DNA from: Macrostomum lignano
Taxonomy: Eukaryota
Reading direction: 5' to 3'
DNA length: 64,000 nt
Assembly: GCA_002269645.1 (NCBI GenBank)
Contig: NIVC01002811.1
Coordinates: 124,001 to 188,000 of the forward strand
Under the pieces are notes generated by a model. That model worked only from the letters and a program-made list of their open reading frames with translations. It had not been told where the DNA came from and did no database searches. Shown here in pieces: positions 1,530 to 55,507 of this stretch. Within the stretch, counting starts at the first letter, position 1, and each line of letters begins with the position of its first letter. Both the position numbers and the translations under genes were made by a program.

Positions 1530-4500
1530 GAGGAGTACACCGGCAGGCCTCGGGTGGCCTCGGTGCTCACCCAGCTCATCCAGTACCGCGCCGGCATCAA
1601 CCCGACTAGTGGAGAGGCGCACGGCGAGGAGCAGAAAGCCGCGAACCTCGGCACCATCCTGGGCGTGTTCTTTCCCTGCATTCAGAACATCTTCGGCGTG
1701 CTGCTGTTCATCAGACTCGGCTGGATTGTCGGCGTCGCTGGCGGCTTCCAGACCCTCATGATCGTGCTGGCATGCTGCACCTGCACTCTGCTGACTGCCA
1801 TCTCCATGTCCGCCATCGCCACGAATGGCCGGGTTCCAGCCGGCGGCTCCTATTTCATGATATCGCGCTCGCTCGGCCCCGAGTTCGGCTCCGCTGTTGG
1901 CGTTCTGTTCTATTTGGCCAACACAGTGGCTGCCGCTATGTACGTTGTGGGCGCGATCGAGATTGCCATCGTGAGTTGGGGGAATTGCTTTGCTGCTGGG
2001 AGGAGTACCGGGGAGACTGGCTGATAAGTAGACAGGGAAGCAGGGAGGGAGAAGGGAGGGAGAGAGGGAGACAGGAAACGAGAGGAGTAGTGAATGAGAA
2101 GTAGACTACGAGAAATCGAGTAGGAGAAGAATCGACTTCAAGTAGAGTTGAAGTAGATTGTGAGAGGTTGAGTGGAAGAAGTAGAGTAGGAGAAGTAGAG
2201 TCAGAGAAGTTGAAGAAGATAAGATAACCTCTCAGCCGCCAACTTTACGCTGTCACGCAGGGAAAGAAAGGCCCGTTATCGGCTGGCAAAAGTAGGTGGC
2301 AACCGTATTGCTGCTGCCCCAGACGCTGGTGGTGTCCACTCCAAAAATACGGACCCCGCCCCTAATAAAAGATCCTGGCTGGAAGAGAAATAGAGAGAGA
2401 GAGAGAGGGAGACAGAGAAGTAGAGAGGCAGACAGGAAGGGAGAGAAGTAGAGGGGCAGACAGGAAGGGAGAGAAGTAGAGAGACAGACAGGAAGGGAGA
2501 GAAGTAGAGAGACAGACAGGAAGGCAGAGAAGTAGAGAGGCAGACAAGAAGGGAGAGAAGTAGAGAGACAGACAGGAAGGGAGAGAAATAGAGAGACAGA
2601 CAGGAAGGGAGAGAAGTAGAGAGACAAGACAGGAATGGAGAGAAGTAGAGAGACAGACAGGAAGGCAGAGAAGTAGAGAGGCAGAAGTAGAGAAGTAGAG
2701 GGGTAGAAAACAGATGTAGGAGAGGGCCATCGCTAATTAAAAAGCCTTTTTCGAGCGTAGTTGCTAAGTAAAGGCACAAATCACGTGACTGATGTACATA
2801 TCGCCGACAACAACAACATCGCTAAACCCTGCTTCTGCAGAAGTACATTGTGCCTCAAGCGGCCCTCTTTGAAGACTTCTTCAACAACGCAAGAATCTAC
2901 GGCCTGATACTGCTGGCACTGATGGGCATCTGCGTGATGATCGGCATTCGCTTCGTGTCCAAGGTGGCGCCCATCTCGCTTGCCTGCGTGCTCATCTCAA
3001 TCCTCAGCCTGACCATCGGCTTCTTCGTGTCCAACGACAGCAGCAGCCCGAGGATGTGCGCCCTGGGCAGCCGGCTGCTGCGCACCAAAGACCTGATGGA
3101 GAATGGCACCATGCAGTGCACTAAAGACCCCAGCGGGCCGATCTACCGGCTCTACTGCCAAAACCAGACGGACTCGGAAGCCTGCCAGTATTTCATGCGC
3201 AACGAAGCGTCCGCGTTCCCCGGCATTCCCGGCATCGCCAGCGGCGTCTTCGTCAAGAACTTCTGGCCGTCGCATTACACCGACGCTGGCTACCTGTACG
3301 ACTCCAATCCGCCGGAGCTGGGCGACAAGGCCCGGGGCGAGGAGCCGTCGATGGCGGATATTAGCACCTCGCTGATCATGCTGATCGGGATCTACTTTCC
3401 CAGCGTCACGGGCATCATGGCCGGCTCCAACAGGAGCGGCGACTTGGCTAAGCCGCACATTTCCATTCCGCGGGGCACCGTAGGCGCCGTGCTGGTCACC
3501 TCTGCTGTCTGTATCCTTTGCGGAGCCTGGGTCTGAATGGAGGGTCACTCTGAATAGAGGGTCACTCTGCATGGAGGGTCACTCTGCATGGAGGGTCACT
3601 CTGAATAGAGGGTCACTCTGAACAGAGGGTCACTCTGAATAGAGGGTCACTCTGAATGAAGGGTCACTCTGAATGGAGGGTCACTCTGAATGGAGGGTCA
3701 CTCTGAATGGAGGGTCACTCTGAATGGAGGGTCACTCTGAATTGAGGGTCACTCGGATTGGAGGGTCACTCTGAATGGAGGGTCACTCTGAATGGAGGGT
3801 CACTCTGAATTGAGGGTCACTCTGAATGGAGGGTCACTCTGAATGGAGGGTCACTCTGAATGGAGGGTCACTCTGAATTGAGGGTCACTCTGAGTGGAGG
3901 GTCACTCTAAATGGAGGGTCACTCTGAATAGAGGGTCACTCTGAATACAGGGTCACTCTGAATACAGGGTCACTCTGAACAGAGGGTCACTCTAAAAAGA
4001 GGGTCACTCTGAATACAGGGTCACTCTGAACAGAGGGTCACTCTGAATAGAGGGTCACTCTGCATGGAGGGTCACTCTAAATGGAGGGTCACTCTGAATA
4101 GAGGGTCACTCTGAATAGAGGGTCACTCTGAATACAGGGTCACTCTGAACAGAGGGTCACTCTGAACAGAGGGTCACTCTGAACAGAGGGTCACTCTGCA
4201 TGGAGGGTCACTCTGAATACAGGGTCACTCTGAACAGAGGGTCACTCTGCATGGAGGGTCACTATAAATGGAGCGTCACTCTGAATGGAGCGTCACTCTG
4301 AATGGAGGGTTACTCTGAATGGAGGGCCACTCTGAACAGAGGGTCACTCTAAATGGAGGGTCACTTTGAATGGAGGGCCACAATTTGAATGGAGAGTCAC
4401 TCTGTATTGAAGAGCACTCTAAAGGCAGAGGCACTCTAAAGAACGTTTATGCTCTTTCTCTTTCGTAGGTACTTTAAAGAGAAACTATTTTCCTTGAATC

Positions 4501-23559: not shown

Positions 23560-24771
23560 TCCCCTTCCTGATTCTGGCAAACTACGAAAGTAAAAATTTC
23601 CTATACTGATGAGTTCCAATGACTTTCAAATACTGAGGGATAAGGTCCAAAAAGGCAGGAAAAGTTTTGAATAGTAAGAAAAAGCACAGTCTGACATGAT
23701 CAGTGTCTCACTCTCATAGCAAAGAACTTTCGCAAGTTGAAACGAGTTGCAGCTTTTTGGCGCTCAAGGTGACAAATACGAGCGTATGCCTAGCCAAAGA
23801 ACAGCATGCACCAGCTCAATGTGCTCATGTGGAAGAAGCAGCATGCACATTAGAAGTTTGGCGTAGCTCCGAATGTCAGCATTGCGGCACAAGTCAGTCC
23901 ACAGGCCCAGCTTCTTCAGCTTTGCTAGAATTGCCTGCGTGAAGTGAAACCAACAACCGTTTGCAGTTGCACTTGGGAATGCCTTGGTAAGGGAGTCCCG
24001 CAGAGCAGCTTCAAAGTCAGTCGTTATATTTAATGGCTCGAAAGCTGGGCACAGTTCCTGGATTTTTGTCCAAACCAGGTGGTAGGTGGCCTTGGACTTG
24101 CCATTCAGGAGTGAAAAGAAGCACGGAAAAAGTAGCCTTGCTTACGCACTCCAATTGTTACTGTTAGTAACTGGTAGAAAATGCACGGCACTATGTGAAA
24201 TGTACCATCAGCAAAGATGGTGTCAGCATGTTCAAGCTCTCGCAGCAGGTCAGGGTGCGCGAAAAAAATAGCAGCATTTTGTCCAGTGTGACTGCTGCCT
24301 TGATACACTTTCTTACCATCAATGCCACAGCATTAAAGGTTTAGATCGCCAGCCTCGAGGAGTTCTATGGCCTCCTCAATTGAAGTAGGAATGTGAGGCT
24401 AGATAGCACGTGTCTTGCCACATGCGAAGCTCCACTTGTGGAAAGGCAATATCATGCCCACCCACATTGCCACTTAAAATCTCATCAAACACTGAACGCA
24501 GGCGCTTCGCAGGCTGCTCCATAGCTGCACTATTCAGACTGCATTTCAGCTTCATAACATGCACTTCACTGTCTGCAACTGGATCATGATTGTGCTGCCC
24601 ATTCAGAATTAGATCTTCACCTTGACCTCTCACTGTCACTTTTGTTGCACAAGTACAATTTTGACATATGAAATATTTTGTTTCATTGTGTGTCCTTCTG
24701 CAGGAGTAAAGAATGTTCTGATAGAGCAGAAGGCTTGATCCTCGCTTGCCTTCAATCAACTCCAAGGCCAT
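23560..24771 (-). pseudogene. Degraded Mutator/MULE transposase with N-terminal FLYWCH-like zinc finger
   Basis: GKRGSSLLLYQNILY..C..C..HNH (FLYWCH-like); IFADGTFHIVPCIFYQLLTV; near 23900-24040 TTDFEAALRDSLTKAFPSATANGCWFHFTQAI. Reading frame is broken. Confidence 0.85.
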
Positions 24772-25439
24772 TGTTTAAAGCTATTTCTGCGTTTCCAAAT
24801 ATCAATGTGAAAGTGATGCACTGAAAAAAGGCAGGATGATATTTAACAAAACTTAGTAAAGGCTTAAACTGTGAATTACATAACAATAGGTGGCAGGCCC
24901 ACTACTTCATCATATTATGCTAGCTAGCTTTTATATTTATTTTTCTTTTTATTTTTGAAAGCATACCATGATAATTGTCCAAGTAAAATGACCAAGTAAA
25001 ACAAAAGAAAAAATGAAAATAAGAAAAGCAAATATGGAAACAAGAAAGGGGCCATGGCCATGAAATACACATGCTGGCTTCTATGAGACAAAGGTTTAGG
25101 CAATTTGGAATTAAAGTCTGGATTTGCTAAAGAAGCTTATTTTCAGATAGTTCCAGCTAGCTCAGACAGAGTGCTTGGCAATGGCGACAGAAGTGTACTT
25201 GGCAAGCTTTTTAACAAAATGGGACCATTAGAGTAAATTTATGGTATGTAGGCCCCCTATTGACTAAAAAGAATATTTTGCCTTTGAGGCAAAAGTGGAT
25301 AAAAGAGACAAGTTCAATGATATTGGGGCACGGACGTTGACTAATCTTATCTTATAAAGAGATACAAGACCACTAGGGCCTAACATGTGATATGGTGGAC
25401 TTGGCTGATGATTTGATTAAATCATCACGACATCAGAAC

Positions 25440-25718
25440 CCTGATTGCAGCGCATGGGCATTTTGGCGGACGGCGTCCGGCGCGGATCTAATACGGCGCG
25501 GCGCGGCGCATACGGTGCGCAGCGATTAGTACGGCGCGGCGCGGAACTAATTAGATGCCGAGGCTTTTAAGCTTGATAAGAGAGTCATAGTTACTCCTGC
25601 CGTTTACCCAAAACTGCGTTAATTTTGCTTTAGGGTTTCTTTCACAGGTAAGTCATTTCACAGCGTGGCGCAGGTTGTGTAGGCGTCTGGCGTACTTAAG
25701 CCATGCGCTGCAATAGGG
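25440..25718. mobile_element. 279-bp non-autonomous DNA transposon (hAT-like) carrying a 28S rRNA fragment
   Basis: Imperfect TIR CCTGATTGCAGCGCATGG / CCCTATTGCAGCGCATGG; 8-bp TSD ATCAGAAC at 25432-25439 and 25719-25726. Confidence 0.8.
25546..25609 (-). pseudogene. 28S rRNA fragment (H69-H71 region, R2 target site), copy 1; not an rRNA gene
   Basis: Reverse complement GGGTAAACGGCAGGAGTAACTATGACTCTCTTA-TCAAGCTT-AAAAGCCTCGGCATCTAATTAGT versus the conserved eukaryotic 28S GGGTAAACGGCGGGAGTAACTATGACTCTCTTA-AGGTAGCC-AAATGCCTCGTCATCTAATTAGT (recalled). Confidence 0.85.
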
Positions 25719-26039
25719 ATCAGAACAAAGACTGCAAAAATTTAAATGCCCCTCTGAATCCATTTTTTTGAGTGTGGGTCCAGAAATCACTGTTTCTAAT
25801 TGAAAATTAAGATAATAAAATCTCATCAGCCAAATATGATGCCATAAAATCAAAGACCTACGACAAAAATAAAATGAATGAAAAATAAAAACTACAAATA
25901 CAAATTATATCTAGTAAAAACTAGCAGGTTAAGGTACCAAACAGTTGTCCAAACAAGCACTTTTTGTGCTGTTTGACAACCTGCAAGAAGTAGATAGATG
26001 ATGCTGGTAGAGTCGCTCGCTTGGCGAGAAGAATAAATA

Positions 26040-27300
26040 GAAAGCTTAATATCAACATTTGAATATGATTGCAATTTATAACAACTTCAATGCGTTTCGC
26101 ACGAAATGGTGCATCGTCAAGATTTTATTAGAACGATTTGAGAAAGTGAGATTGAAAACGATTGATTAAATATTGGTTTTTGCAACGTACACAGGTAAGG
26201 AGGGTAAGATTGAAAACAATTGATAACAACTTGGCTTAAACAACACACATAACATAAGTAGGCAGGAGATCGAAAATTAAACCAAATGTACACAATTCTT
26301 GTTCAGTGGTCAAAAGGCAGAATCAGAGGCGGTAGCTTAAGTAATTGAACGTCAAGTTAAGTGCACACAGCGTACACGACTGTGTCACTCACTGTTCAGA
26401 AAACGCGGAGAACGTGACCTGCACCACTATGTTGTAATTGGGTGTTGAGATTCGGGGTCTGAGCTTTTATGTGCAGAGCCTCGAGAATTCTAAGTTTGGC
26501 GTCAGTATGGCTTTGGTCAATGATTTTAAAGTGTTCTTCTGGTTTGCAGTCATTGCAGTTAGTGCATTCAAGGAGGTGAGTTTGTATAGCAGATGGTTTG
26601 AGCCAGTGTTCCCTGATCCTCGTGTGTAGGTGTCTTTTGGTTTTCCCCACGTAGGAGACGCTCTGGTCCACAGAGCAGTTAAATTGATAGACAACACCTG
26701 CACGCAGAGTACAAGGAACACGCGACTTTAATCTGCTAACAAAGTTCCCAATCTTGTTCGTGTGGAAGACGACCCGAATGTTACGATTGAAAGAGGCAAA
26801 GAATAACCTACGCATTCTGTTTTTAAAGGCTAGAGATGGAGGTCCGAGGAAGGGGAGATGCAGAATGGGTTCAAATTCTTCAGTGGTAACAGATTGCTCA
26901 GGTTTTTGTTTGGTGATTTTGTCCGAGATGAACTTGTTGATGATTTTTTGAACCAGAAAACGGGGTAGTCATTTTGATGGAACAGTCTGGTGAGGAACTG
27001 CACCTCCCGGTCAAAGTTGATCCAGGTGTTACAGGTAGTGAAAGCTCTATGGAGCAAACACCTCACGAGCCTAGTTTTCCATTGTCTGGGGCAAGTGGCT
27101 TGGAAGTTGAGAATGAGATTGGTAAAGCTTTGCTTACGGAAGACTTTTGTGGAGAGGGTTTCCTTACTGTAGTCAATGTCAATGTCCAGGAAGGGGAGTC
27201 TTTGGTCAACAGCATGTTCAACCGTGAATTTTATGTTCTTATGAGTGGAATTGAGAGCGTGGAGGAACTGATCAATTTGATTTGATTTTCGCAACTGGAC
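26040..27300 (-). mobile_element. 5'-truncated Penelope-like retroelement: RT C-terminus/thumb plus GIY-YIG endonuclease, frameshifted
   Basis: ALNSTHKNIKFTVEH..LPFLDI..VFRK..LLHRAF..LFHQNDYP (Penelope RT/thumb); GVVYQFNC..YVGKTKRHLHTRIREH..LRILEALHIK..PNLNTQ (GIY-YIG). The YxDD motif is absent (truncated). Confidence 0.9.
26088..26125 (-). ncRNA. Candidate degenerate minimal hammerhead ribozyme in the Penelope 3' repeat
   Basis: Minus strand reads CTTGACGAT-GCAC-CATTTC-GTGC-GAAACGCATT: a variant core plus stem II plus GAAA, with a near-palindromic ACGC(A/G)T stem III. Confidence 0.4.
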
Positions 27301-27974
27301 ATCGCTGCAGTCGCAGCAGTCGAGAAGATATTAAAATAATCGGCTAAATCTGACATGGCCCGGCAGGTGTGTCCGCATGGCATTCGGAAAAGTATTTTAA
27401 GTTACGTAGTATGAGTAAAGACTAAGAGCTAAGAAGAAGCAGGGAGCTTGAAATCATGAATGCATGTGCCCTGCCTCAGCTCTGTCTTTTGTGTGCACAA
27501 AGACAGTTTTAGACTCTGCAGTTACGATGACTAACTGGAAATTCAACGTACATTTGTACTGTTTTTAGTATCAAAAATACAATGTACAATAGCATGTGAT
27601 TTTTCATATGCCTCATATTCTCTCTCCACTCTTCCCCATTTTTTACATTGCTCGCTCATACCCTTCCGTCTAGCCGCTAGCGGGAACGAGCCCTAGCAGG
27701 CCTGGTCTGTTGTCTGTTATTGGTTAATGTTTTTTGGCTAAGAGGCTGCTAAAAATTTTTTTTCGGCAAAGTGAAGTTTCGGCCTAATGAAGTTTCGGCC
27801 TTACGAAAGAGCGTGCTAGTCATTTCGGCAAAGTGAAGTTTCGGCCTAGTGAAAGAGGCAGCTAAAATTATTTTTCGGCAAAGTGAAGTTTCGGCCTAAT
27901 GAAGTTTCGGCGTTGTGAAGGAAGATGCTTTTGGCAAAGTGAAATTTCGGCCTAGTGAAACCCCCCCCCCCGTG

Positions 27975-28320
27975 TTATAGGGGAGTGTTATAAGCCAAAT
28001 TGTGCATGTGGTGCAGAGAGCATCTGCCAAAATCAACAAGGCTAGTAGGCTAGTGAATGATCCATGGTTCTTCAGGCACACAGCAGCCCCACTCTTTGCA
28101 CCATGCATCACATTGTAGTTTTCTCTCATGACAGCCAGGTAGTTAACCTTTGAAACTGCTTCAGCCAGGTGTTTGGCCATAGCAGAAGTTATATTTGGCA
28201 AAGCAATGTACATCGTATGTATGTTAAACGAATCCCCTGGTAGATAGTGCACAACATTGCCTAGGTATTTCACTCCATTGTTTGTCTCATCCAGATGCAG
28301 TTGTGCATACATGCGCAAGC
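27975..28320 (-). pseudogene. hAT transposase fragment (catalytic region)
   Basis: LHLDETNNGVKYLGNVVHY resembles the first catalytic D (LDETTD); RENYNVMHGAKSGAAVCLK resembles DNASVMxGxKSGVxxxLK. Confidence 0.6.
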
Positions 28321-28418
28321 GCAACCCCCCTGATTTACACTGGCCATGCGACAATTTTTTTGACCAAAAATGTGACTTACCTGCGAAAGAAACCCTAAAG
28401 CAAAATTAACGCAGATTT

Positions 28419-28489
28419 GGGTAAACGGCAGGAGTAACTATGACTGTCTTATCATTTAATAATATTAAATGCCTCGGCATCTAATTAGT
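28419..28489 (+). pseudogene. 28S rRNA fragment (R2 target site), copy 2; not an rRNA gene
   Basis: GGGTAAACGGCAGGAGTAACTATGACTGTCTTA-TCATTTAATAATATT-AAATGCCTCGGCATCTAATTAGT; shares about 46 bp of non-rDNA flank with copy 1. Confidence 0.85.
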
Positions 28490-29536
28490 ACTACGTCCGT
28501 ATTCTTTGGGGTGGCATTTTTGCGACTTACCCCTGGTCCACCACAATTTACGGTGGCCAGATCGGCCAGCAGTTGCGCATATATGCAGTTGTGTATCACT
28601 CTGTCTCTCACTTTGGCAAAAGCTTCCATTAGCAGATATGCTTTGCTTTGTTCACAGCGTATCCAGCTTATACAGATATGAGGGAAAGATAAAGGATTAG
28701 CATAGTATAGCAAAGTGCCAAAGTGTTATTAGATCGCGCAGTTTGCTAGCTTGACTGCTGCTAATTTGTTGAATTAGTTCCATAATTCTCTATTATCTCG
28801 CCGTGGTATTTCGGTCATCCCATTTGCATCTCTAAGCTACAGTCAATCCCTAGCTACTCTCTATGCCTCTTAGGGCATTCTGAATATTGCATGGCGCTGA
28901 GGGCTCTTACAATATACTCGGCTATTTTAACTGGATTATCAGAGCTGCCAGCGTTTGTACTTTCGAATACTACATCCGCATCAACCCTTCCCAGGGCCTT
29001 TCTAGACCCTTGGAGTGTCTCCGCATTTTCAATGGTTTTATCATCAACTGGCTTTGTTTTTTTAATATTGATTTTCTATTTCCATGGCATCAGAATGCTG
29101 GTTGCGGTTTTTCAAATTGAAAACCGAAAATCAATTTTTATCAGCGCTTCCTTGAATCTGTGTCATCACGGAGGCAAACCTTTGGCATAAAAGAATTAAA
29201 CGTGATAAAAAAGAATGCAATTTTGTGTTTTTTTCTGGCTAATAGCCTTGGCAGAGATGTAATTGTTGTCTAGCCAAGTCTACTTGTAGTGAAAGCAGGT
29301 GACTGGGAAGAACCTGTACCTACTAGACAGAGACCCTAATCATTGCCCTAGAAGAAACTAGTAACAAAGTACCGTGACGACGGCGCACCTGAACACGCGG
29401 CTTACTTGCCTGGAAGCTTCCCAGGAGTCCTGCCCGTACCCCTCATCGATGCGGTCTGTAATTCTCAGTTTGTCTCGAGTCAATGCTAGGACTGAGCCGA
29501 GCTCACCTGCAAGTGTTAAACGATCTTGGAGCAAAT

Positions 29537-29836
29537 ATAATAATAATAATTGATTGCGCCTACCCTACTGGCCAGATGTGCAACCGACAGCTCAGCCGCA
29601 GCTATTGCGCGGTGCATCTGAAGGCTGCGTTACGGCTGTTCAGTCCAAGGACTGGGGGGTCGCCACACAGCCTCAATTATTACCCCAGCTAATGCTGGCA
29701 CCCACTTGGGTGAACTGAAGCAATGCAGAGTTGAGTGTCTTGCTCAAGGACACAAATTGTTCCGAGTAGGTCGAGAATCGAACCCCCGACCTTTCAGTCG
29801 TGAGTACGACGCTCTAACCACTAGGCTACAACCCCC
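29537..29836 (-). mobile_element. tRNA-derived SINE with CORE/V-SINE-like central domain and (ATT)n tail, about 100 bp upstream of the MEK ATG
   Basis: A box TAGCCTAGTGG; B box GGTTCGATTCTC; central TGTGTCCTTGAGCAAGACACTCAAC; tail ATTATTATTATT. Confidence 0.8.
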
Positions 29837-29939
29837 TAGATATCAACCCTCTATAGTGCACATTAAAGCACGAACACTATCAGTAACATTTGAGGTAACG
29901 GGTAACTTGCCTACACATTGCAGCCACTGCCAGCAAAGC

Positions 29940-32900
29940 ATGGAAGGAGCCGGTCGTAAAAACCTAATGAATTTGACAATCCCAACATCAAGCGCAGGTG
30001 GTGGAAGCGGTGGCGGCGGCGGCGGCGGCAGCGGCAGTGACTCCGAGCAGAAAAGCGCCACAGGCGTAGTCGATGTGCAACGAGTGATGAAGAAGATGGA
30101 CGAGCAGGGCGAAGAGCTGGACGAGAGCCAGCGACAGAAGCTTGTAGAGTTTGTGCGCCGCAAGCACACTATTGGCGAACTGAAGAATGACGACTTTGCC
30201 GATATTGTTGAGCTTGGCTGCGGCTCTTCCGGTGTTGTACAGCGAGTGTTGCACAAGCCGACTAAACAGGTGATGGCTAGGAAGCTGATCCACCTGGAGA
30301 TTAAGCCGTCTGTGCGCACTCAGATTATTCGCGAGTTGGAGGTTAGTTCTGGCTGATCAATTTTTCATCTCCATAGTCGTATTGAGACATTTATTATGTT
30401 GAAGTCTATTAAAAATGTTTTATGATTTGTTTGGAATCACCCTGAACTCACTTAAAATCACCCTAAAGTACTCCCTCGGAATCACCCTGAACTCATGCAG
30501 ATCACACTGAACTCCCTCAGAATCACCCTGAACTCACTGAGAATCACCCTAAACTCATTCAGAATCATCATGAACTACTTCAGAATCACCCTGAACTCAC
30601 TGAGAATCACCCTGAACTCACTGAGAATCACCCTGAACTCACTGAGAATCACCCTGAACTCACTGAGAATCACCCTGAACTCACTGAGAATCACCCTGAA
30701 CTCACTGAGAATCACCCTGAACTCACTGAGAATCACCCTGAACTCCCTCAGAATCACCCTGAACTCACTGAGAATCACCCTGAACTCCCTCAGAATCACC
30801 CTGAACTCACTGAGAATCAACCCTGAACTCACTGAGAATCACCCTGAACTCCCTCAGAATCATCCTGAACTCCCTCAGAACCACCCTGAGCTCACTCAAA
30901 ATCACTCTGAACTCCCTCAAAATTACCCTGAACTCACTGAGAATCAACCCTGAACTCACTGAGAATCACCCTGAACTCACTGAGAATCACCCTGAACTCA
31001 CTCAGAATCACCCTGAACTCCCTCTGAATCACCCTGAACTCCCTCAGAATCATCCTGAACTCCCTCAGAACCACCCTGAACTCACTCAAAATCACCCTGA
31101 ACTCACTCAAAATCAACCCTGAACTCACTCAGAATCACCCTGAACTCACTGAGAATCACCCTGAACTCACTCAGAATCACCCTGAACTCACTCAGAATCA
31201 CCCTGAACTCACTGAGAATCACCCCGAACTTCCCTCAGAGTTGCCTTAAACTCGAACTCCACAATCCTCATGCACTCTCAGCTAATATAATAATTGAACC
31301 GTCTGCCAGGTGCTGCACTCGTGCAACAGCCCGTACATTGTGGGCTATTTCGGCGCATTCTTTGTCGACTCGTCGGCCACAATCAGCATCTGCATGGAGT
31401 ACATGAACGCTGGCTCGCTCGACTTGGTGTTGAAGCAGGCCGGCCGGCTGCCCGAGCCTATCGTGTCTAAGATCACCTTCTCTGTGCTTCGGGGCCTCAT
31501 CTACCTTCGGCAGAATATCAACTGCCTGCATCGGTGAGTTTCGGAGTTTTGTCATCCTGACCCACTGGGTCAACATGAACTCTAATCCTGACCCACGTGC
31601 TGACCCGTTGAGTCAATAAGGATTCCGCTTACTGACCCGCAACCCTGACCCACTGGGTCAACAGGGATTCTGCCTACTGACCCGCAACCCTGACCCACTG
31701 GGTCAACAGAGATTCCGCATACTGACCCGCAACCCTGACCCACAGGGTCAACAGGGATTCCGCATACTGACCCGCAACCCTGACCCACTGGGTCAACAGG
31801 GATTCTGCCTACTGACCCGCAACCCTGACCCACTGGGTCAGCAGGGATTCCGCATACTGACCCGCAACCCTGACCCACTGGATCAACAGGGATTCTGCCT
31901 ACTGACCCGCAACCCTGACCCACTGGGTCAGCAGGGATTCCGCATACTGACCCGCAACCCTGACCCACTGGGTCAGCAGGGATTCCGCCTACTGACCCGC
32001 AACCCTGACCCACTGGGTCAGCAGGGATTCCGAATACCGACCCGCAACCCTGACCCACTGGGTCAGCAGGGATTCCGAATACCGACCCGCAACCCTGACC
32101 CACTGGGTCAACAGGGATTCCGCCTACTGACCCGCAACCCTGACCCACTGGGTCAGCAGGGATTCCGCCTACTGACCCGCAACCCTGACCCACTGGGTCA
32201 GCAGGGATTCCGCATACTGACCCGCAAGTCTCTCCCTCAACCCGCAGCGACGTAAAGCCGTCAAACATTCTCGTCAACCTGGAGGGCGAGTGCAAACTGT
32301 GCGACTTCGGCGTCTCCGGCCAGCTGATTGACAGCATGGCCAACAGCTTCGTGGGCACCCGGTCCTACATGGCCCCGGAGAGGCTCAATGGCGAAGAGTA
32401 CTCAATCCTGTCCGACATCTGGTCGATGGGACTCAGCCTGATCGAGCTGGCCACGGGCCGGTACCCGATCCCGCAGCCGGACAGCCGGGATTACACCAAC
32501 ATATTCAGCAGCGACAGGCAGCAGAACCTGCGCGAGCACATGGAAGCGGCCAAGACTGGCAAACGGCTGAGATGTGAGCTCACGATTTCAGTAAATCTGT
32601 AAACTGTAATATCTGTAATATTTGTAGTTTTTGTAAACTATTATCAAATATCCAATGCTCGAAATCTTAAAAAAACGATTTTATGATCTGTTTGGAATCG
32701 CCCTGAAATGCCTCAGAATCGCCCTGAACTCCCTCAGGATCGCCCTGAACTCCCTCAGGATCGCCCTGAACTTCCTCAGAATCACCCTGAAATGCCTCAG
32801 AATCGCCCTGAAATGCCTCAGAATCCCCCTGAAATGCCACAGAATCGCCCTGAACTCCCTCAGGATCGCCCTGAACTCCCTCAGGATCGCCCTGAACTCC

Positions 32901-33644: not shown

Positions 33645-35610
33645 TAGCCCCCGCTGTGCAGTCACCCCAGACCAATCACCAACCCCCAGCCCCCGCTGTG
33701 CAGGCACCCCAGACCAATCACCAACCCCCAGCCCCCGCTGTGCAGGCACCCCAGACCAACCCCCAGCCCCCGCTGTGCAGTCATCCCAGACCAATCACCA
33801 ACCCCCAGCCCTCGCTGTGCAGTCACCCCAGACCAACCCCCAGCCCCCGCTGTGCAGTCACCCCAGACCAACCCCCAGCCCCCGCTGTGCAGTCACCCCA
33901 GACCAACCCCCAGCCCCCGCTGTGCAGTCACCCCAGACCAATCACCAACCCCAGCCCCCGCTGTGCAGTCACCCCAGACCAACCCCCAGCCCCCGCTGTG
34001 CAGTCACCCCAGACCAACCCCCAGCCCCCGCTGTGCAGTCACCCCAGACCAATCACCAACCCCCAGCCCCCGCTGTGCAGTCATCCCAGACCAATCACCA
34101 ACCCCCAGCCCCCGCTGTGCAGTCACCCCAGACCAACCCCAGCCCCCGCTGTGCAGTCACCCCAGACCAACCCCCAGCCCCCGCTGTGCAGTCACCCCAG
34201 ACCAATCACCAACCCCCAGCCCCCGCTGTGCAGTCATCCCAGACCAATCACCAACCCCCAGCCCCCGCTGTGCAGTCACCCCAGACCAACCCCCAGCCCC
34301 CGCTGTGCAGTCACCCCAGACCAACCCCCAGCCCCCGCTGTGCAGTCACCCCAGACCAACCCCCAGCCCCCGCTGTGCAGGCACCCCGGACCAACCCCCA
34401 GCCCCCGCTGTGCAGTCACCCCAGACCAACCCCCAGCCCCCGCTGTGCAGTCACCCCAGACCAACCCCAGCCCCCGCTGTGCAGTCACCCCAGACCAACC
34501 CCAGCCCCCGCTGTGCAGGCACCCCGGACCAACCCCCAGCCCCCGCTGTGCAGTCACCCCAGACCAATCACCAACCCCAGCCCCCGCTGTGCAGGCACCC
34601 CAGACCAATCACCAACCCCCAGCCCCCGCTGTGCAGGCACCCCAGACCAACCCCCAGCCCCCGCTGTGCAGTCATCCCAGACCAATCACCAACCCCCAGC
34701 CCTCGCTGTGCAGTCACCCCAGACCAACCCCCAGCCCCCGCTGTGCAGTCACCCCAGACCAACCCCTAGCCCCCGCTGTGCAGTCACCTCAGACCAACCC
34801 CCAGCCCCCGCTGTGCAGTCACCCCAGACCAACCCCCAGCCCCCGCTGTGCAGTCACCCCAGACCAATCACCAACCCCCAGCCCCCGCTGTGCAGTCATC
34901 CCAGACCAATCACCAACCCCCAGCCCCCGCTGTGCAGTCACCCCAGACCAACCCCCAGCCCCCGCTGTGCAGTCACCCCAGACCAACCCCCAGCCCCCGC
35001 TGTGCAGTCACCCCAGACCAACCCCCAGCCCCCGCTGTGCAGGCACCCCGGACCAACCCCCAGCCCCCGCTGTGCAGTCACCCCAGACCAACCTCCAGCC
35101 CCCGCTGTGCAGTCACCCCAGACCAACCCCAGCCCCCGCTGTGCAGTCACCCCAGACCAACCCCCAGCCCCCGCTGTGCAGGCACCCCGGACCAACCCCC
35201 AGCCCCGCTGTGCAGTCACCCCAGACCAACCCCCAGCCCCCGCTGTGCAGTCACCCCAGACCAACCCCCAGCCCCCGCTGTGCAGGCACCCCGGACCAAC
35301 CCCCAGCCCCCGCTGTGCAGTCACCCCAGACCAACCCCCAGCCCCCGCTGTGCAGGCACCCCGGACCAACCCCCAGCCCCCGCTGTGCAGTCACCCCAGA
35401 CCAACCCCCAGCCCCCGCTGTGCAGTCACCCCAGACCAACCCCCAGCCCCCGCTGTGCAGTCACCCCAGACCAACCCCCAGCCCCCGCTGTGCAGTCACC
35501 TCAGACCAACCCCCAGCCCCCGCTGTGCAGGCACCCCGGACCAACCCCCAGCCCCCGCTGTGCAGGCACCCCAGACCAACCCCCCCAGCCCCCGCTGTGC
35601 AGTCACCCCA
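33645..35610. repeat. C-rich 35/42-bp minisatellite ACCAACCCCCAGCCCCCGCTGTGCAGTCACCCCAG downstream of MEK
   Basis: Direct inspection; explains the 600+ aa spurious ORFs. Confidence 0.96.
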
Positions 35611-36099
35611 GCCGGTGGCTATGAAACAAGCAAAATTAATACGCTAGTATTTTTCATCGTTCGCCTATTTTAACAGCTGACAATAATATATAATGTTTAA
35701 CTCGTCTAATGATGTTTGGTACAATCGCTTAAGTGAAGCTAGCTTTTAAACTTTTAAACCACCATCTAGTCTAGTGGCACTGTCGTTGTTTCTCTTCGTG
35801 AATATATAATTATGCTTTGATGAGTTGATTCACGCTGAATCTGCCTGCTTATTACTGACTGTCAGTTATTCCCCGTTATATGGATGACAATTGCGTGTGA
35901 TATCTGGCAATTCAGCATTGCCTCTACACTGTTTTCTGGCTTTTCCTCTAATATCTGTGTTGATAGTTTTAGATGGCACCGTTGTTGCTACTTCAAGTAG
36001 CGTACTTGCTTCTTTTGCACTGCTGTTTAACGTTAAGAATTTGATAGATTATATTTCGCAACTTTTAAATGTTGTTGATTGTTATAAACAATGCCGCAC

Positions 36100-38262: not shown

Positions 38263-52135
<13,873 letters not shown>

Positions 52136-53998: not shown

Positions 53999-55507
53999 GC
54001 TCCATCTCTGCGCCTCTCCGCCAACCTCAGCTGGTTGTTCGCCGACCGGCCTGGCATTGTTGAGCGGCTGGGCCGCGCGGCGGCTCGCGGCTTTCGCTAC
54101 GTGGAGGCGATGGACGCCGGCGGCGAGACCCCGGCCAGCCTAGCGGATGCCTGCCGGCGCGCTGGAGGACTTCAGTTCGCCCTTATCAATGCGCCGCCCT
54201 GCCGGCTGCCCAGCGGCGATCTTGGCTTAACGGCCCTTCCAGATAGGTGAAATGGAGTGGCAATTCTTAGCCTACCCCAACCCATCCTCCAATGTGCACA
54301 CGCTCTCAGTCTGCCCCTAATAACTCCACCCATCCCCCAATGTACATACGCTCTCAGTCTGCCCCTAATAACTCCACCCATCCCCCAATGTACATACGCT
54401 CTCAGTCTGCCCCTAATAACTCCACCCGTCTCCCAATGTACACACGCTCTCAGTCTGCCCCTAAGAATCCCACCCATCCTCCAATGTACATACGCTCTCA
54501 GTCTGCCCCTAAGAATCCCACCCATCCCCCAATGTACATACGCTCTCAGTCTGCCCCTAAGAATCCCACCCATCCCCCAATGTACACACGCTCTCAGTCT
54601 GCCCCTAATAACTCCACCCATCCCCAAATGTACATACGCTCTCAGTCTGTCCCTAAGAATCCCACCCATCCCCCAATGTACACACGCTCTCAGTCTGCCC
54701 CTAATAACTCCACCCATCCCCCAATGTACACACGCTCTCATTCTGCCCCTAAGAAGCCCACCCATCCCCCAATGTACACACGCTCTCAGTCTGCCCCTAA
54801 TAACTCCACCCATCCCCCAATGTACATACGCTCTCAGTCTGCCCCTAATAACTCCACCCATCCCCCAATGTGCACACGGCTACCAGCCTGCCACTACCAA
54901 CCATAATATCTTAAATCAAAAGTTCGAAATGTACTATTGTAACCAAAATTCGAACTTTCCTTCCGGCAGACGCGAAGAATTCCGCGCTGGCCTGTCCGCC
55001 GCGGCCGACCTGTGCTCGGCTCTGTCCTGTCCGACACTTCACGTCATGTCCGGCCGCACGACCGTCCGGAGTCCGGAGGTCCGCGCCGCCTACGTAGACG
55101 GTCTGCGTGAAGCTGTCCAAATTTTTGCGCCTCTCGGCGTCACCTGCGTTATCGAGCCAATTAGCAACATAGCCGATTATTACCTGAACTCGTACACCGA
55201 TGCGGTGGCCATCATTAACGACGTGCCGGGCCTTCGCCTACTGCTGGACCTGTTCCACCTGCAGATGCTGGAGGGCTCGCTTGACTCGCTGCCAGCCTAC
55301 CTGCCTCTGGCCGGTCACGTGCAAATCGCGCAGGCACCTGGTCGCCAAGAACCCGGAGCACCGGGCGATATCGACTATGGCGCGGTGTTGCGTCAGATTG
55401 GTGAGGCCGGCTACTCGGGCTGCGTCGGACTGGAGTACCGACCGAGCGACGGTGCCGAGGCCGGCATCGACTGGCTGATTGAGATGGGCTACCTGCAGCC
55501 TCATTAA
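53999..55507 (+). CDS. HYI: Hydroxypyruvate isomerase (HYI, xylose-isomerase-like TIM barrel). Exons 53999-54246 and 54970-55507; no in-frame ATG at the 5' end
   Basis: APSLRLSANLSWLF, GFRYVE, LHVMSG, VIEPIS, LLLDLFHLQMLEG, GHVQIAQAPGRQEP, GLEY. Phase-2 intron 54247-54969. Confidence 0.93.
54270..54875. repeat. 48-bp minisatellite filling the HYI intron
   Basis: Unit CCAATGTACATACGCTCTCAGTCTGCCCCTAATAACTCCACCCATCCC. Confidence 0.95.

What the first reader, a model, noticed from the sequence alone, without database searches (positions are those of the whole stretch)
25440..25718. A MITE carrying the 28S rRNA R2-target site with the cut site replaced
Seen: a 279-bp element with TIRs and an 8-bp TSD (ATCAGAAC) contains 64 nt matching the conserved 28S H69-H71 region. 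It has 33 nt with 1 mismatch and about 23 nt with 2 mismatches, but the central AGGTAGCC is replaced by TCAAGCTT. Established: R2 retrotransposons cut at TTAAGG/TAGC, I-PpoI and Pokey use the same site, and many R2 HDV-like ribozymes self-cleave in 28S up to 36 nt upstream of the junction. Seen: the homology starts at GGGTAAAC, exactly 36 nt upstream of the R2 junction. Inference: an R2-ribozyme-processed rDNA/R2 junction, or a cleaved and repaired target, was captured by a DNA transposon and amplified. It could act as an endonuclease-immune decoy or a source of antisense RNA to H69. A CAG/GTAAGT donor at about 25645-25653 on the antisense-rRNA strand would let the piece be exonized.
Basis: partly seen in the sequence, partly recalled or inferred. 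Interest (0 to 1): 0.8.

Follow-up and report, generated by a model that had tools for sequence, protein, structure and literature searches.

The report
Small transposons carrying a scarred 28S fragment
In this flatworm (Macrostomum lignano) sequence, two small cut-and-paste transposons that are otherwise unrelated carry the same ~110-base module containing a piece of 28S ribosomal RNA gene whose well-known endonuclease cut site has been replaced by short filler; it is a real and unusual transposon cargo, but nothing here shows that it has a function.

Summary
Window 25440-25718 is a 279-bp non-coding element with an 18-nt TIR and a perfect 8-bp TSD (ATCAGAAC). On its minus strand it carries 33 nt (1 mismatch) and 23 nt (2 mismatches) of eukaryotic 28S, positions -36..-4 and +6..+28 relative to the R2 site. 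The 8 nt between them are replaced.

New findings:
- The host is Macrostomum lignano.
- A second 280-bp element (28306-28585, opposite strand) has its own TSD (CAGTTGTG) and carries the same module at about 96% identity. Its arms and TIRs are not alignable to the first element.
- The shared module is 110-117 nt. It consists of 46 nt of non-rRNA sequence, 28S arm A, a filler, and 28S arm B.
- The filler differs between the copies (8 nt against 15 nt). In copy 2 it forms a significant 9+1+9 palindrome templated on arm B, which is a break-repair signature.

The most likely reading is an rDNA-derived passenger module reshuffled among non-autonomous DNA transposons and carried passively. An origin from an R2 junction or from a cut-and-repaired target is plausible but unproven. 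No ribozyme or R2 sequence was found, and -36 is the extreme of the published range. The decoy, antisense and exonisation ideas have no support. Only two copies could be examined because the host genome was not searchable.

The parts
25432..25439 (.). E1 left target-site duplication ATCAGAAC
   Evidence: Identical 8-mer at 25719-25726, directly abutting the TIRs
25440..25718 (+). E1: 279-bp non-autonomous TIR/TSD DNA element, the finding itself
   Evidence: Stop codons in all six frames
25440..25457 (+). E1 left TIR CCTGATTGCAGCGCATGG
   Evidence: Pairs with 25701-25718. 14-nt perfect core. Score reached by 0 of 2000 shuffles
25489..25544 (+). E1 GC-rich subterminal direct repeats (TAATACGGCGCGGCGCGG, about 19-nt period)
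   Evidence: the repeat finder D2/D5. TRF row 25490-25544
25546..25655 (-). Shared core module, copy 1 (110 nt); the 28S-sense strand is the minus strand
   Evidence: Aligns to 28489-28373. blastn E=1e-32, nhmmer E=1e-37
25546..25568 (-). 28S arm B (+6..+28 relative to the R2 site), 21/23 to consensus
   Evidence: Rfam LSU alignment. Coordinates
25569..25576 (-). Filler TCAAGCTT replacing 28S AGGTAGCC at the R2/Pokey (and I-PpoI) cut site
25577..25609 (-). 28S arm A (-36..-4), 32/33 to consensus
25610..25655 (-). 46-nt non-rRNA part of the core; on the + strand it ends in a Y-tract followed by CAG|GTAAGTCA
   Evidence: Not 28S-like (p=0.36). Conserved 44/46 in copy 2
25701..25718 (-). E1 right TIR
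25719..25726 (.). E1 right TSD ATCAGAAC
28298..28305 (.). E2 left TSD CAGTTGTG
   Evidence: Identical 8-mer at 28586-28593
28306..28585 (-). E2: 280-bp TIR/TSD element carrying the same core, with TIRs CATACATGCGCAA and CATATATGCGCAA
   Evidence: TIR p=0.0085; the TIR motif occurs only at these two places in the window
28373..28489 (+). Shared core module, copy 2 (117 nt): 46-nt part 28373-28418, arm A 28419-28451, filler 28452-28466, arm B 28467-28489
   Evidence: Weak Rfam LSU hit at 28430-28492
28453..28471 (+). Perfect 9+1+9 palindrome CATTTAATA-A-TATTAAATG spanning the filler and the first 5 nt of arm B
   Evidence: the repeat finder I16. 14 of 5000 shuffles reach this arm length
28586..28593 (.). 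E2 right TSD CAGTTGTG

Best explanation
E1 (25440-25718) is a genuine miniature non-autonomous cut-and-paste DNA transposon in the Macrostomum lignano genome. The 8-bp TSD points to a hAT-type or similar transposase, but the superfamily is not assigned.

Its 28S-like stretch belongs to a discrete passenger module of about 110 nt. The same module sits, with the same layout, in a second 280-bp element (E2) whose arms and TIRs are unrelated to E1's. The module is a chimera. It joins 46 nt of unknown origin, at 28S position -36, to a 28S piece spanning -36 to +28. In that piece the 8 nt around the R2/Pokey (and I-PpoI) cut site were lost in a break-and-repair event and replaced by short filler. 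The filler is partly templated on the neighbouring arm.

The most likely mechanism is modular reshuffling. Foreign DNA is copied into non-autonomous elements by template switching during repair of the double-strand gap left by excision. The source would be a dispersed rDNA-derived locus, such as a damaged 28S pseudogene or a 28S/R-element junction. The module is then carried along passively as the elements transpose.

What is shown: the element boundaries, the 28S origin of the two arms, the shared module, and the palindromic filler. What is inferred: the acquisition route, the source locus, and the lack of function.
For: - TIR and perfect 8-bp TSD for both elements.
- No coding capacity in either element.
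- The 28S arms are far beyond chance and are placed by Rfam's LSU model at positions 2200-2314.
- Both copies share two substitutions against 28S (G to A at -25, T to G at +16) and the same breakpoints (-36, -4/+6, +28). This points to one ancestral module, not two captures from rDNA.
- Divergence between the copies is uniform at about 4% across the rRNA-derived and the non-rRNA parts (2/46, 1/33, 1/23). That is as expected if the 28S arms are under no special constraint.
- The arms and TIRs of E1 and E2 are not homologous (p=0.45 and 0.66), so the module moves between backbones.
- The E2 filler is a significant perfect palindrome templated on arm B, as expected from snap-back synthesis in end joining.
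- There is no significant RNA fold on either strand, and no ribozyme, snRNA or snoRNA match.
- Precedent: TEs with rDNA-derived modules (Pokey/mPok IGS and ITS2 repeats, SINE28, 5S SINEs, Cassandra) are attributed to modular reshuffling, especially in non-autonomous elements (PMC10946416; PMC3849761).
Against: - A passively carried passenger does not readily explain why the core is about 96% identical, with coincident ends and the same placement (long arm 106/96 nt, short arm 63/67 nt, total 279/280 bp), in two backbones whose TIRs are unalignable. That pattern could instead reflect selection on the core, or a core that is itself a discrete mobile or RNA-coding unit.
- Only two copies were available, and they lie 2.6 kb apart.
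- No source locus was seen, and the host's own 28S could not be read.
- Template switching during gap repair is drawn from established knowledge of hAT, P and Mutator-type elements. It was not demonstrated here.
Confidence: 0.5

Rival explanations
1. Origin from an R2-type junction. The module would be a captured 5' junction of an R2-like retrotransposon that had inserted outside rDNA. The 46 nt would be the ectopic flank. The element RNA would begin at 28S -36 because its HDV-like ribozyme cleaves there. The junction would carry a small 28S deletion and non-templated filler, and the element's 5' end would begin with a duplicated copy of downstream 28S sequence.
For: - Published R2 5' junctions show exactly these ingredients: 2-7 bp 28S deletions, non-templated nucleotides, and 21-26 bp duplications of upstream or downstream 28S with 1-3 substitutions. 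Earwig R2 has a 22-bp duplication from downstream (PMC3774820).
- Ribozyme cleavage occurs 9-36 nt upstream.
- Sea-squirt R2 5' ends carry internalised 28S-like sequence.
- R2 occurs in flatworms, and two flatworm R2 families have lost rDNA specificity (PMC5035012).
- The 28S homology here starts sharply at -36.
Against: - No R2 5' UTR, ribozyme or reverse-transcriptase sequence adjoins the fragment. The two copies diverge immediately after arm B.
- The only flatworm R2 examined is predicted to cleave at -28, and -36 is the extreme of the range.
- The downstream arm starts at +6, so TAGCC is missing.
- The match of a single breakpoint to one of several published positions is weak evidence.
Confidence: 0.2
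2. Cut-and-repaired target. A transposon-borne intact 28S fragment (-36..+28, roughly a full R2 recognition site) would have been cleaved by an rDNA-site endonuclease such as the R2 protein. Error-prone end joining then repaired the break and destroyed the site. Only such immune copies would persist and spread.
For: - The lesion is confined to the 8 nt spanning the R2/Pokey (and I-PpoI) cleavage position, while both arms are nearly intact.
- The filler is hypervariable compared with the rest of the core: a 7-nt indel plus 2 substitutions in 5 nt, against about 4% elsewhere.
- In E2 the filler is a significant palindrome templated on the adjacent arm. From established knowledge, templated insertions of this kind are typical of alternative end joining at double-strand breaks.
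Against: - Both copies share identical deletion boundaries and the same first three (TCA) and last two (TT) filler bases. This points to one ancestral scar with later instability of an AT-rich quasi-palindrome, not to repeated independent cuts.
- No copy with an intact site was seen.
- No R2 was found in the window, and the target requirements of any host R2 endonuclease are unknown.
Confidence: 0.12
3. The core is itself a discrete small mobile or RNA-coding unit of about 115 nt, for example a chimeric retro-copy or a SINE-like or snRNA-like gene. It would have landed in, or been captured by, two unrelated MITE backbones independently.
For: - The ends of the shared block coincide in both backbones to within a few nt.
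- Two copies in one 64-kb window hints at high genomic abundance.
- On the sense strand the unit begins ACTTACCTG, which from memory is identical to the 5' end of U1 snRNA.
Against: - No TSD, poly-A or terminal repeats flank the core inside either element (read directly).
- There is no Rfam match to U1, snoRNAs or any other family at E<=10.
- There is no significant fold.
- No recognisable Pol III A/B boxes, C/D boxes or Sm-site arrangement were seen by inspection.
Confidence: 0.1
4. The core is a functional cargo kept by selection. It could be a non-cleavable decoy that titrates the R2 protein, a source of RNA antisense to 28S H69-H71 or to 28S/R2 co-transcripts, or a portable splice element (Y-tract, then CAG|GTAAGT).
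For: - The core is far better conserved than the arms and TIRs.
- The two arms cover most of the region that R2 proteins recognise, while the cut site is destroyed.
- A perfect donor consensus, preceded by a polypyrimidine tract and CAG, is conserved in both copies.
Against: - The rRNA-derived arms are no better conserved between the copies than the non-rRNA 46 nt.
- There is no stable structure.
- No exonised copies were found in protein databases that include the UniRef M. lignano proteome.
- No expression or binding data exist.
- Two copies cannot demonstrate selection.
Confidence: 0.07
5. Chance resemblance or assembly artefact.
For: The Rfam score is below the gathering threshold.
Against: - The arms match 32/33 and 21/23, collinear and correctly spaced (P about 1e-18 and 3e-11).
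- The same module is present twice, each time with its own perfect TSD.
Confidence: 0.01

Closest known systems
Pokey / mPok (piggyBac DNA transposon and its MITEs in Daphnia)
   Same: These are DNA transposons and derived MITEs that carry rDNA-derived internal sequence (IGS 'A' repeats and a 48-bp ITS2 piece). They are tied to exactly this 28S site, the TTAA of TCTTAAGGTAGCCAAATG (PMC3849761).
   Different: Pokey inserts into the 28S site and makes TTAA duplications. The elements here sit outside rDNA, make 8-bp TSDs, and carry the 28S target region itself in a disrupted form rather than spacer repeats.
SINE28 (mammalian SINE derived from 28S rRNA) and other TEs with rDNA modules (5S SINEs, Cassandra/Ajax TRIMs)
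   Same: They are non-autonomous mobile elements whose body contains rRNA-gene-derived sequence, and they are explained by modular reshuffling (PMC10946416).
   Different: Those are retroelements. In the 5S cases the module supplies a Pol III promoter. Here the carrier is a TIR/TSD DNA element, and no benefit of the 64-nt 28S piece is evident.
R2 5' junction variants and R2 lineages with internalised 28S-like sequence
   Same: The layout matches: upstream 28S ending a few nt short of the site, then filler, then about 22 nt of downstream 28S with substitutions (earwig R2). A possible RNA 5' end lies up to 36 nt upstream (PMC3774820). 28S-like sequence also occurs inside some R2 elements (PMC5035012).
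   Different: No R2 sequence or ribozyme is attached, the fragment is not in rDNA, and it is embedded in DNA transposons.
Gene-fragment-carrying non-autonomous DNA transposons (transduplication, e.g. Pack-MULEs; internal filler DNA in hAT and P derivatives)
   Same: A short TIR/TSD element with foreign internal DNA acquired at the DNA level. This comparison rests on established knowledge and was not tested here.
   Different: Such families normally share TIRs and differ in cargo. Here the cargo is shared and the TIRs differ.

Membership tests
MITE / non-autonomous class II element | Terminal inverted repeats | tested here: met
   E1 has 18 nt with a 14-nt perfect core (0 of 2000 shuffles). E2 has 12/13 (p=0.0085)
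MITE / non-autonomous class II element | Target-site duplication directly flanking the TIRs | tested here: met
   ATCAGAAC and CAGTTGTG, each 8/8
MITE / non-autonomous class II element | Small size and no coding capacity | tested here: met
   279 and 280 bp, with stops in all six frames
MITE / non-autonomous class II element | Multi-copy family sharing the same TIRs | tested here: inconclusive
   Each TIR type occurs once in the 64-kb window. The host genome was not searchable
hAT superfamily | 8-bp TSD | tested here: met
   Both elements. P, Merlin and some Mutator-like elements also give 8 bp (established knowledge)
hAT superfamily | TSD consensus nTnnnnAn and termini 5'-YARNG (consensus recalled from memory) | tested here: not met
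   The E1 TSD ATCAGAAC fits, but the E2 TSD CAGTTGTG does not. The termini CCTGA/CCCTA (E1) and CATAC/CATAT (E2) do not fit YARNG
hAT superfamily | Related autonomous element with a hAT transposase and matching TIRs | not testable with these tools
   None in the window, and the host genome was not available
TE with an rDNA-derived module | Significant similarity of internal sequence to an rRNA gene | tested here: met
   Rfam RF02543 positions 2200-2314, E=3e-4. Arms 32/33 and 21/23
R2 5'-junction-derived sequence | R2 5' UTR or HDV-like ribozyme sequence contiguous with the 28S leader | tested here: not met
   No HDV-like or R2 Rfam hit at E<=10 in E1 or E2. The copies diverge right after arm B
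R2 5'-junction-derived sequence | 28S leader begins at the host R2 ribozyme cleavage site | not testable with these tools
   The host R2 is unknown. Published range is 9-36 nt, and -28 is predicted for planarian R2
C/D-box snoRNA (antisense guide to 28S) | C (RUGAUGA) and D (CUGA) boxes bracketing a 10-21-nt guide | tested here: not met
   Only UGAUAAG and CUGC are present (inspection). Rfam snoRNA hits are noise at E about 1-7
Introner-type MITE | Splice sites placed so that the whole insertion is removed as an intron | tested here: not met
   The only donor is internal (25648), about 70 nt from the 3' end, and there is no GT at either terminus

The most novel reading that the evidence does not exclude
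The ~110-nt module is not a passive passenger. It would be a selected, portable, 'disarmed' copy of the R2 target site, exchanged among unrelated MITE backbones and present in thousands of copies. It would work by soaking up the R2 or another 28S-site endonuclease without being cut, or by producing RNA antisense to 28S/R2 co-transcripts. That would amount to a transposon-borne defence, or a transposon-versus-transposon interference device, centred on the most heavily parasitised site in animal rDNA.
Probability: 0.07. Interest if true: 0.8.

Novelty: new member of a known kind. Interest (0 to 1): 0.4.

Why it matters
Transposable elements that carry rRNA-gene pieces are known, but the catalogued cases are 5S-promoter retroelements, one 28S-derived SINE, and Pokey with spacer repeats. 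A miniature DNA transposon carrying the coding-region site that R2, Pokey and I-PpoI all attack, with that site specifically destroyed, is not in that catalogue (PMC10946416).

It is a compact natural record of a break-and-repair event at that site. If the module proves abundant, it also matters practically. It would be a source of 28S-like reads and small RNAs in a flatworm model used for stem-cell and regeneration work.

The reversed conservation pattern, with shared cargo and unrelated termini, would make a useful test case for how non-autonomous elements exchange modules.

If the core turns out to bind R2 protein or to yield antisense RNA, it would be a new kind of interaction between a DNA transposon and an rDNA retrotransposon.

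Tried and rejected
1. 28S homology extending upstream of -36. Rfam forces an alignment there, but in-register identity (13/44, p=0.36) and anchored alignments are no better than shuffles. Rejected.
2. HDV-like ribozyme, U1, snoRNA or any other Rfam family in E1 or E2. Nothing was found at E<=10 except the LSU match. My manual search for P1/P1' partners of GGGUAAA or GGCAGGA gave nothing convincing.
3. Stable RNA structure of the core on either strand. The z-scores were +1.06, +0.96, -1.51 and -0.81. Rejected.
4. E1 and E2 as diverged members of one family. The arms are not alignable.
5. A larger composite element or Penelope-related structure bounded by E1 and E2. The core is the only long inverted repeat in 23.5-30.5 kb, and each element has its own TSD.
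6. A nested insertion of the core. No TSD or terminal repeats flank the core inside either element.
7. Introner, spliced-leader RNA and C/D snoRNA readings. The motif positions do not fit.
8. More copies from public data. The scar junction gave one metagenome hit and one IMG/VR hit, both chance matches with no surrounding similarity. The non-rRNA core part is absent from IMG/VR.
9. Host contigs through exact-protein look-ups. Exact look-ups of two flanking ORFs and a homology search with the Penelope-like ORF show that M. lignano contigs are not in the indexed collections.
10. Exonised copies. A search with concatenated peptides translated from the core found none.
11. Other copies, other elements with either TIR type, or paralogous empty sites in the window. 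None were found.
12. Literature searches for MITEs with 28S fragments were swamped by papers on arachnid mites. Searches on M. lignano transposons gave nothing specific.
Full report
**What is in the sequence**

Window 25440-25718 reads as a discrete 279-bp insertion.
- It is bounded by a perfect 8-bp direct repeat, ATCAGAAC, at 25432-25439 and 25719-25726.
- Its termini, CCTGATTGCAGCGCATGG and CCCTATTGCAGCGCATGG, form an inverted repeat with a 14-nt perfect core. The alignment score was reached by 0 of 2000 shuffles.
- It has stop codons in all six frames.

On the minus strand it carries two stretches of eukaryotic large-subunit rRNA.
- Arm A is GGGTAAACGGCAGGAGTAACTATGACTCTCTTA at 25577-25609, matching 32/33.
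- Arm B is AAAAGCCTCGGCATCTAATTAGT at 25546-25568, matching 21/23.
- Between them, TCAAGCTT stands where 28S has AGGTAGCC.
- Rfam's eukaryotic LSU model finds this independently: 25539-25654(-), model positions 2200-2314, E=3e-4, below the gathering score because the match is short.
- The arms cannot be chance, with P about 1e-18 and 3e-11.
- Arm A starts 36 nt before the R2 junction TTAAGG|TAGCC, by my count.
- CAG|GTAAGT lies at 25645-25653 on the strand antisense to the rRNA-like stretch.

**Host**

[quoted passage not shown] The last exon of a hydroxypyruvate-isomerase gene at about 54.9-55.5 kb is 99% identical to UniRef A0A1I8H9T6 of that species. The window is extremely rich in minisatellites. 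No true rRNA gene is present.

**A second copy changes the picture**

A search for the rRNA-like core found a second copy at 28431-28451 on the opposite strand. It lies in its own element, E2.
- E2 spans 28306-28585 and is 280 bp.
- Its TSD is CAGTTGTG, at 28298-28305 and 28586-28593.
- Its TIRs are CATACATGCGCAA and CATATATGCGCAA.

Alignment of the two elements shows that similarity is confined to an internal block, 25546-25655(+) against 28489-28373(-).
- Apart from the filler, the block is about 96% identical.
- The flanking arms and the TIRs are not detectably homologous. Local alignment against shuffles gives p=0.45 and 0.66, while each element's own TIR is significant.
- Even so, the layout is the same in both. 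The long arm (106 and 96 nt) is on the arm-B side, the short arm (63 and 67 nt) is on the other side, and the totals are 279 and 280 bp.

This is the reverse of the usual MITE pattern, in which termini are shared and interiors differ.

**Anatomy of the shared module**

Read on the 28S-sense strand, the module has four parts in this order.
1. 46 nt, TGACTTACCTGYGAAAGAAACCCTAAAGCAAAATTAACGCAGWTTT. This part is not 28S-like. In-register identity to the LSU consensus is 13/44 (p=0.36), and an anchored alignment gives p=0.36.
2. Arm A, 28S positions -36..-4.
3. A filler.
4. Arm B, 28S positions +6..+28.

Both the similarity to 28S and the similarity between the copies stop after CTAATTAGT.

Both copies share two substitutions against 28S (G to A at -25, T to G at +16) and all the breakpoints. 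They therefore descend from a single ancestral chimera and are not two captures from rDNA.

Differences between the copies are spread evenly: 2/46 in the non-rRNA part, 1/33 in arm A and 1/23 in arm B. There is therefore no sign that the rRNA-derived arms are under special constraint.

The filler is the exception.
- It is TCAAGCTT (8 nt) in E1 and TCATTTAATAATATT (15 nt) in E2.
- In E2 it forms a perfect 9+1+9 palindrome, CATTTAATA-A-TATTAAATG, whose right arm includes the first 5 nt of arm B. Only 14 of 5000 shuffles of E2 reach that arm length.
- From established knowledge, a reverse-complement copy of the adjacent flank is the signature of snap-back, templated synthesis in end joining at a double-strand break, or of quasi-palindrome correction.
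- E1's filler contains only weak palindromes (AAGCTT, and GCTT-AA-AAGC).
- The two fillers share their first three and last two bases and identical deletion boundaries. That favours one ancestral scar that has since been unstable over two independent scars.

**What it is not**
- No Rfam family other than LSU matches either element at E<=10. That rules out a detectable HDV-like ribozyme, R2 element RNA, U1 or a credible snoRNA.
- Neither strand of the core folds better than shuffled controls.
- C/D boxes, Sm-site order, Pol III boxes and introner-type splice-site placement do not fit.
- The inverted E1...E2 pair flanks a fragment of a Penelope-like retroelement (GIY-YIG ORF at 26396-26815). However, the core is the only long inverted repeat in the neighbourhood, and each element has its own TSD. 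They are independent insertions.

**Attempts to get more copies**

The window holds no further copies of the core, no other element with either TIR type, and no paralogous empty site.

Public scans were also unproductive.
- The scar junction gave two hits, both chance matches.
- The non-rRNA part of the core is absent from IMG/VR.
- M. lignano contigs are not in the protein-indexed collections.
- A query made of peptides translated from the core found no exonised copies, although the UniRef M. lignano proteome is in that database.

All conclusions therefore rest on two copies 2.6 kb apart. If the window is a random sample, two copies in 64 kb would imply thousands genome-wide. Local clustering cannot be excluded.

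**Mechanism**

The best-supported reading is that E1 and E2 are miniature non-autonomous cut-and-paste elements whose shared interior is a passenger module of rDNA origin.
- The 8-bp TSD suggests hAT-like elements, but the termini do not fit the hAT consensus, so the superfamily is left open.
- The module would have been acquired and exchanged at the DNA level by template switching during gap repair. This route is established knowledge for hAT, P and Mutator derivatives.
- It is the route that the 2024 review of rDNA and TE interplay calls modular reshuffling (PMC10946416).
- Pokey and mPok, which carry IGS- and ITS2-derived repeats, are the nearest precedent among DNA transposons (PMC3849761).

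The lesion at the cut site and its templated filler indicate that the source sequence had suffered a break and repair at the R2/Pokey (and I-PpoI) position.

**The R2 ideas**

The literature makes an R2-junction origin plausible.
- R2 5' junctions in various animals combine 2-7 bp 28S deletions, non-templated bases and 21-26 bp duplications of upstream or downstream 28S with a few substitutions (PMC3774820).
- R2 ribozymes cleave 9-36 nt upstream.
- Some R2s carry internalised 28S-like sequence.
- Flatworms have R2, including families that no longer target rDNA.

Several points weaken it here.
- No R2 sequence or ribozyme is attached to the fragment.
- -28 is the commonest site and is the one predicted for planarian R2.
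- TAGCC is missing from the downstream arm.
- The -36 boundary is a single inherited junction. The agreement of the two copies adds nothing to it.

[quoted passage not shown] That gene could not be read here.

The Pokey paper does not mention I-PpoI.

**Function**

Nothing found here supports a function as decoy, antisense source or splice element.

The one observation that a passive-passenger model does not explain well is the strong conservation and identical placement of the core in two backbones with unrelated termini. That keeps two readings alive, each at low probability: a selected-cargo reading and a discrete-unit reading.

**Verdict**

It is best filed as a new member of the known class of TEs with rDNA-derived modules. 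Interest is moderate. It would rise sharply if genome-wide data showed selection on the core, independent scars, or R2-protein binding.

Noticed in passing
window 26396-27294 (-): A fragment of a Penelope-like retroelement lies between the two MITE-like elements. It consists of a 139-aa ORF with a GIY-YIG nuclease domain (Pfam E=1e-4) and an adjacent 154-aa ORF with RT-C-terminal-like motifs. The best database relatives are only about 44% identical.
   Followed up: partly
window 24376-24771 (-): A 131-aa ORF with a FLYWCH zinc-finger domain (Pfam E=2e-7) lies about 700 bp upstream of E1. Whether it is a host gene or transposase-derived is undetermined.
   Followed up: no
whole window, e.g. 258-1511, 3532-4404, 33678-35611, 39459-41725, 48354-49400: There is an extraordinary density of minisatellites, with periods of 13-48 bp and tens to about 140 copies each (65 TRF rows). 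They create long spurious ORFs in GC-rich stretches.
   Followed up: no
window 54280-55507 (+): The last exon of the hydroxypyruvate-isomerase gene (99% identical to M. lignano A0A1I8H9T6) is preceded, in the same open frame, by a 48-bp minisatellite of 12.5 copies that encodes a PQCTHALSLPLI-type repeat.
   Followed up: partly
window 29706-30356 (+): An ORF containing the start of a protein-kinase domain (GELKNDDF...[11 protein letters not shown]..., MAP2K-like by eye; Pfam Pkinase E=1e-3) is followed by a 21-bp minisatellite.
   Followed up: no
window 25489-25544 (+): The long arm of E1 consists of GC-rich subterminal direct repeats of about 19 nt (TAATACGGCGCGGCGCGG). Each unit begins with a TAAT/TTAG motif resembling the end of 28S arm B (CTAATTAG). 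They could be transposase-binding repeats or degenerate duplications of the 28S edge.
   Followed up: no
window 25630-25655 (+) and 28373-28398 (-): The conserved end of the core reads polypyrimidine tract, then CAG|GTAAGTCA. This juxtaposes acceptor-like and perfect donor motifs, like a recursive splice site. Its complement ACTTACCTG equals, from memory, the 5' end of U1 snRNA. E2 has a second GGTAAGTC motif in its long arm (28521-28531).
   Followed up: partly
window 27752-27970 (+): An array of 16/46-nt repeats (TTTCGGCCTAGTGAAG) ends in a poly-C run, a few hundred bp from E2. Its nature is unknown.
   Followed up: no
L001 1054-1076; L002 4925-4947: The only public matches to the 23-nt scar-junction pattern are chance hits in AT-rich sequence with no surrounding 28S or core similarity.
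   Followed up: yes
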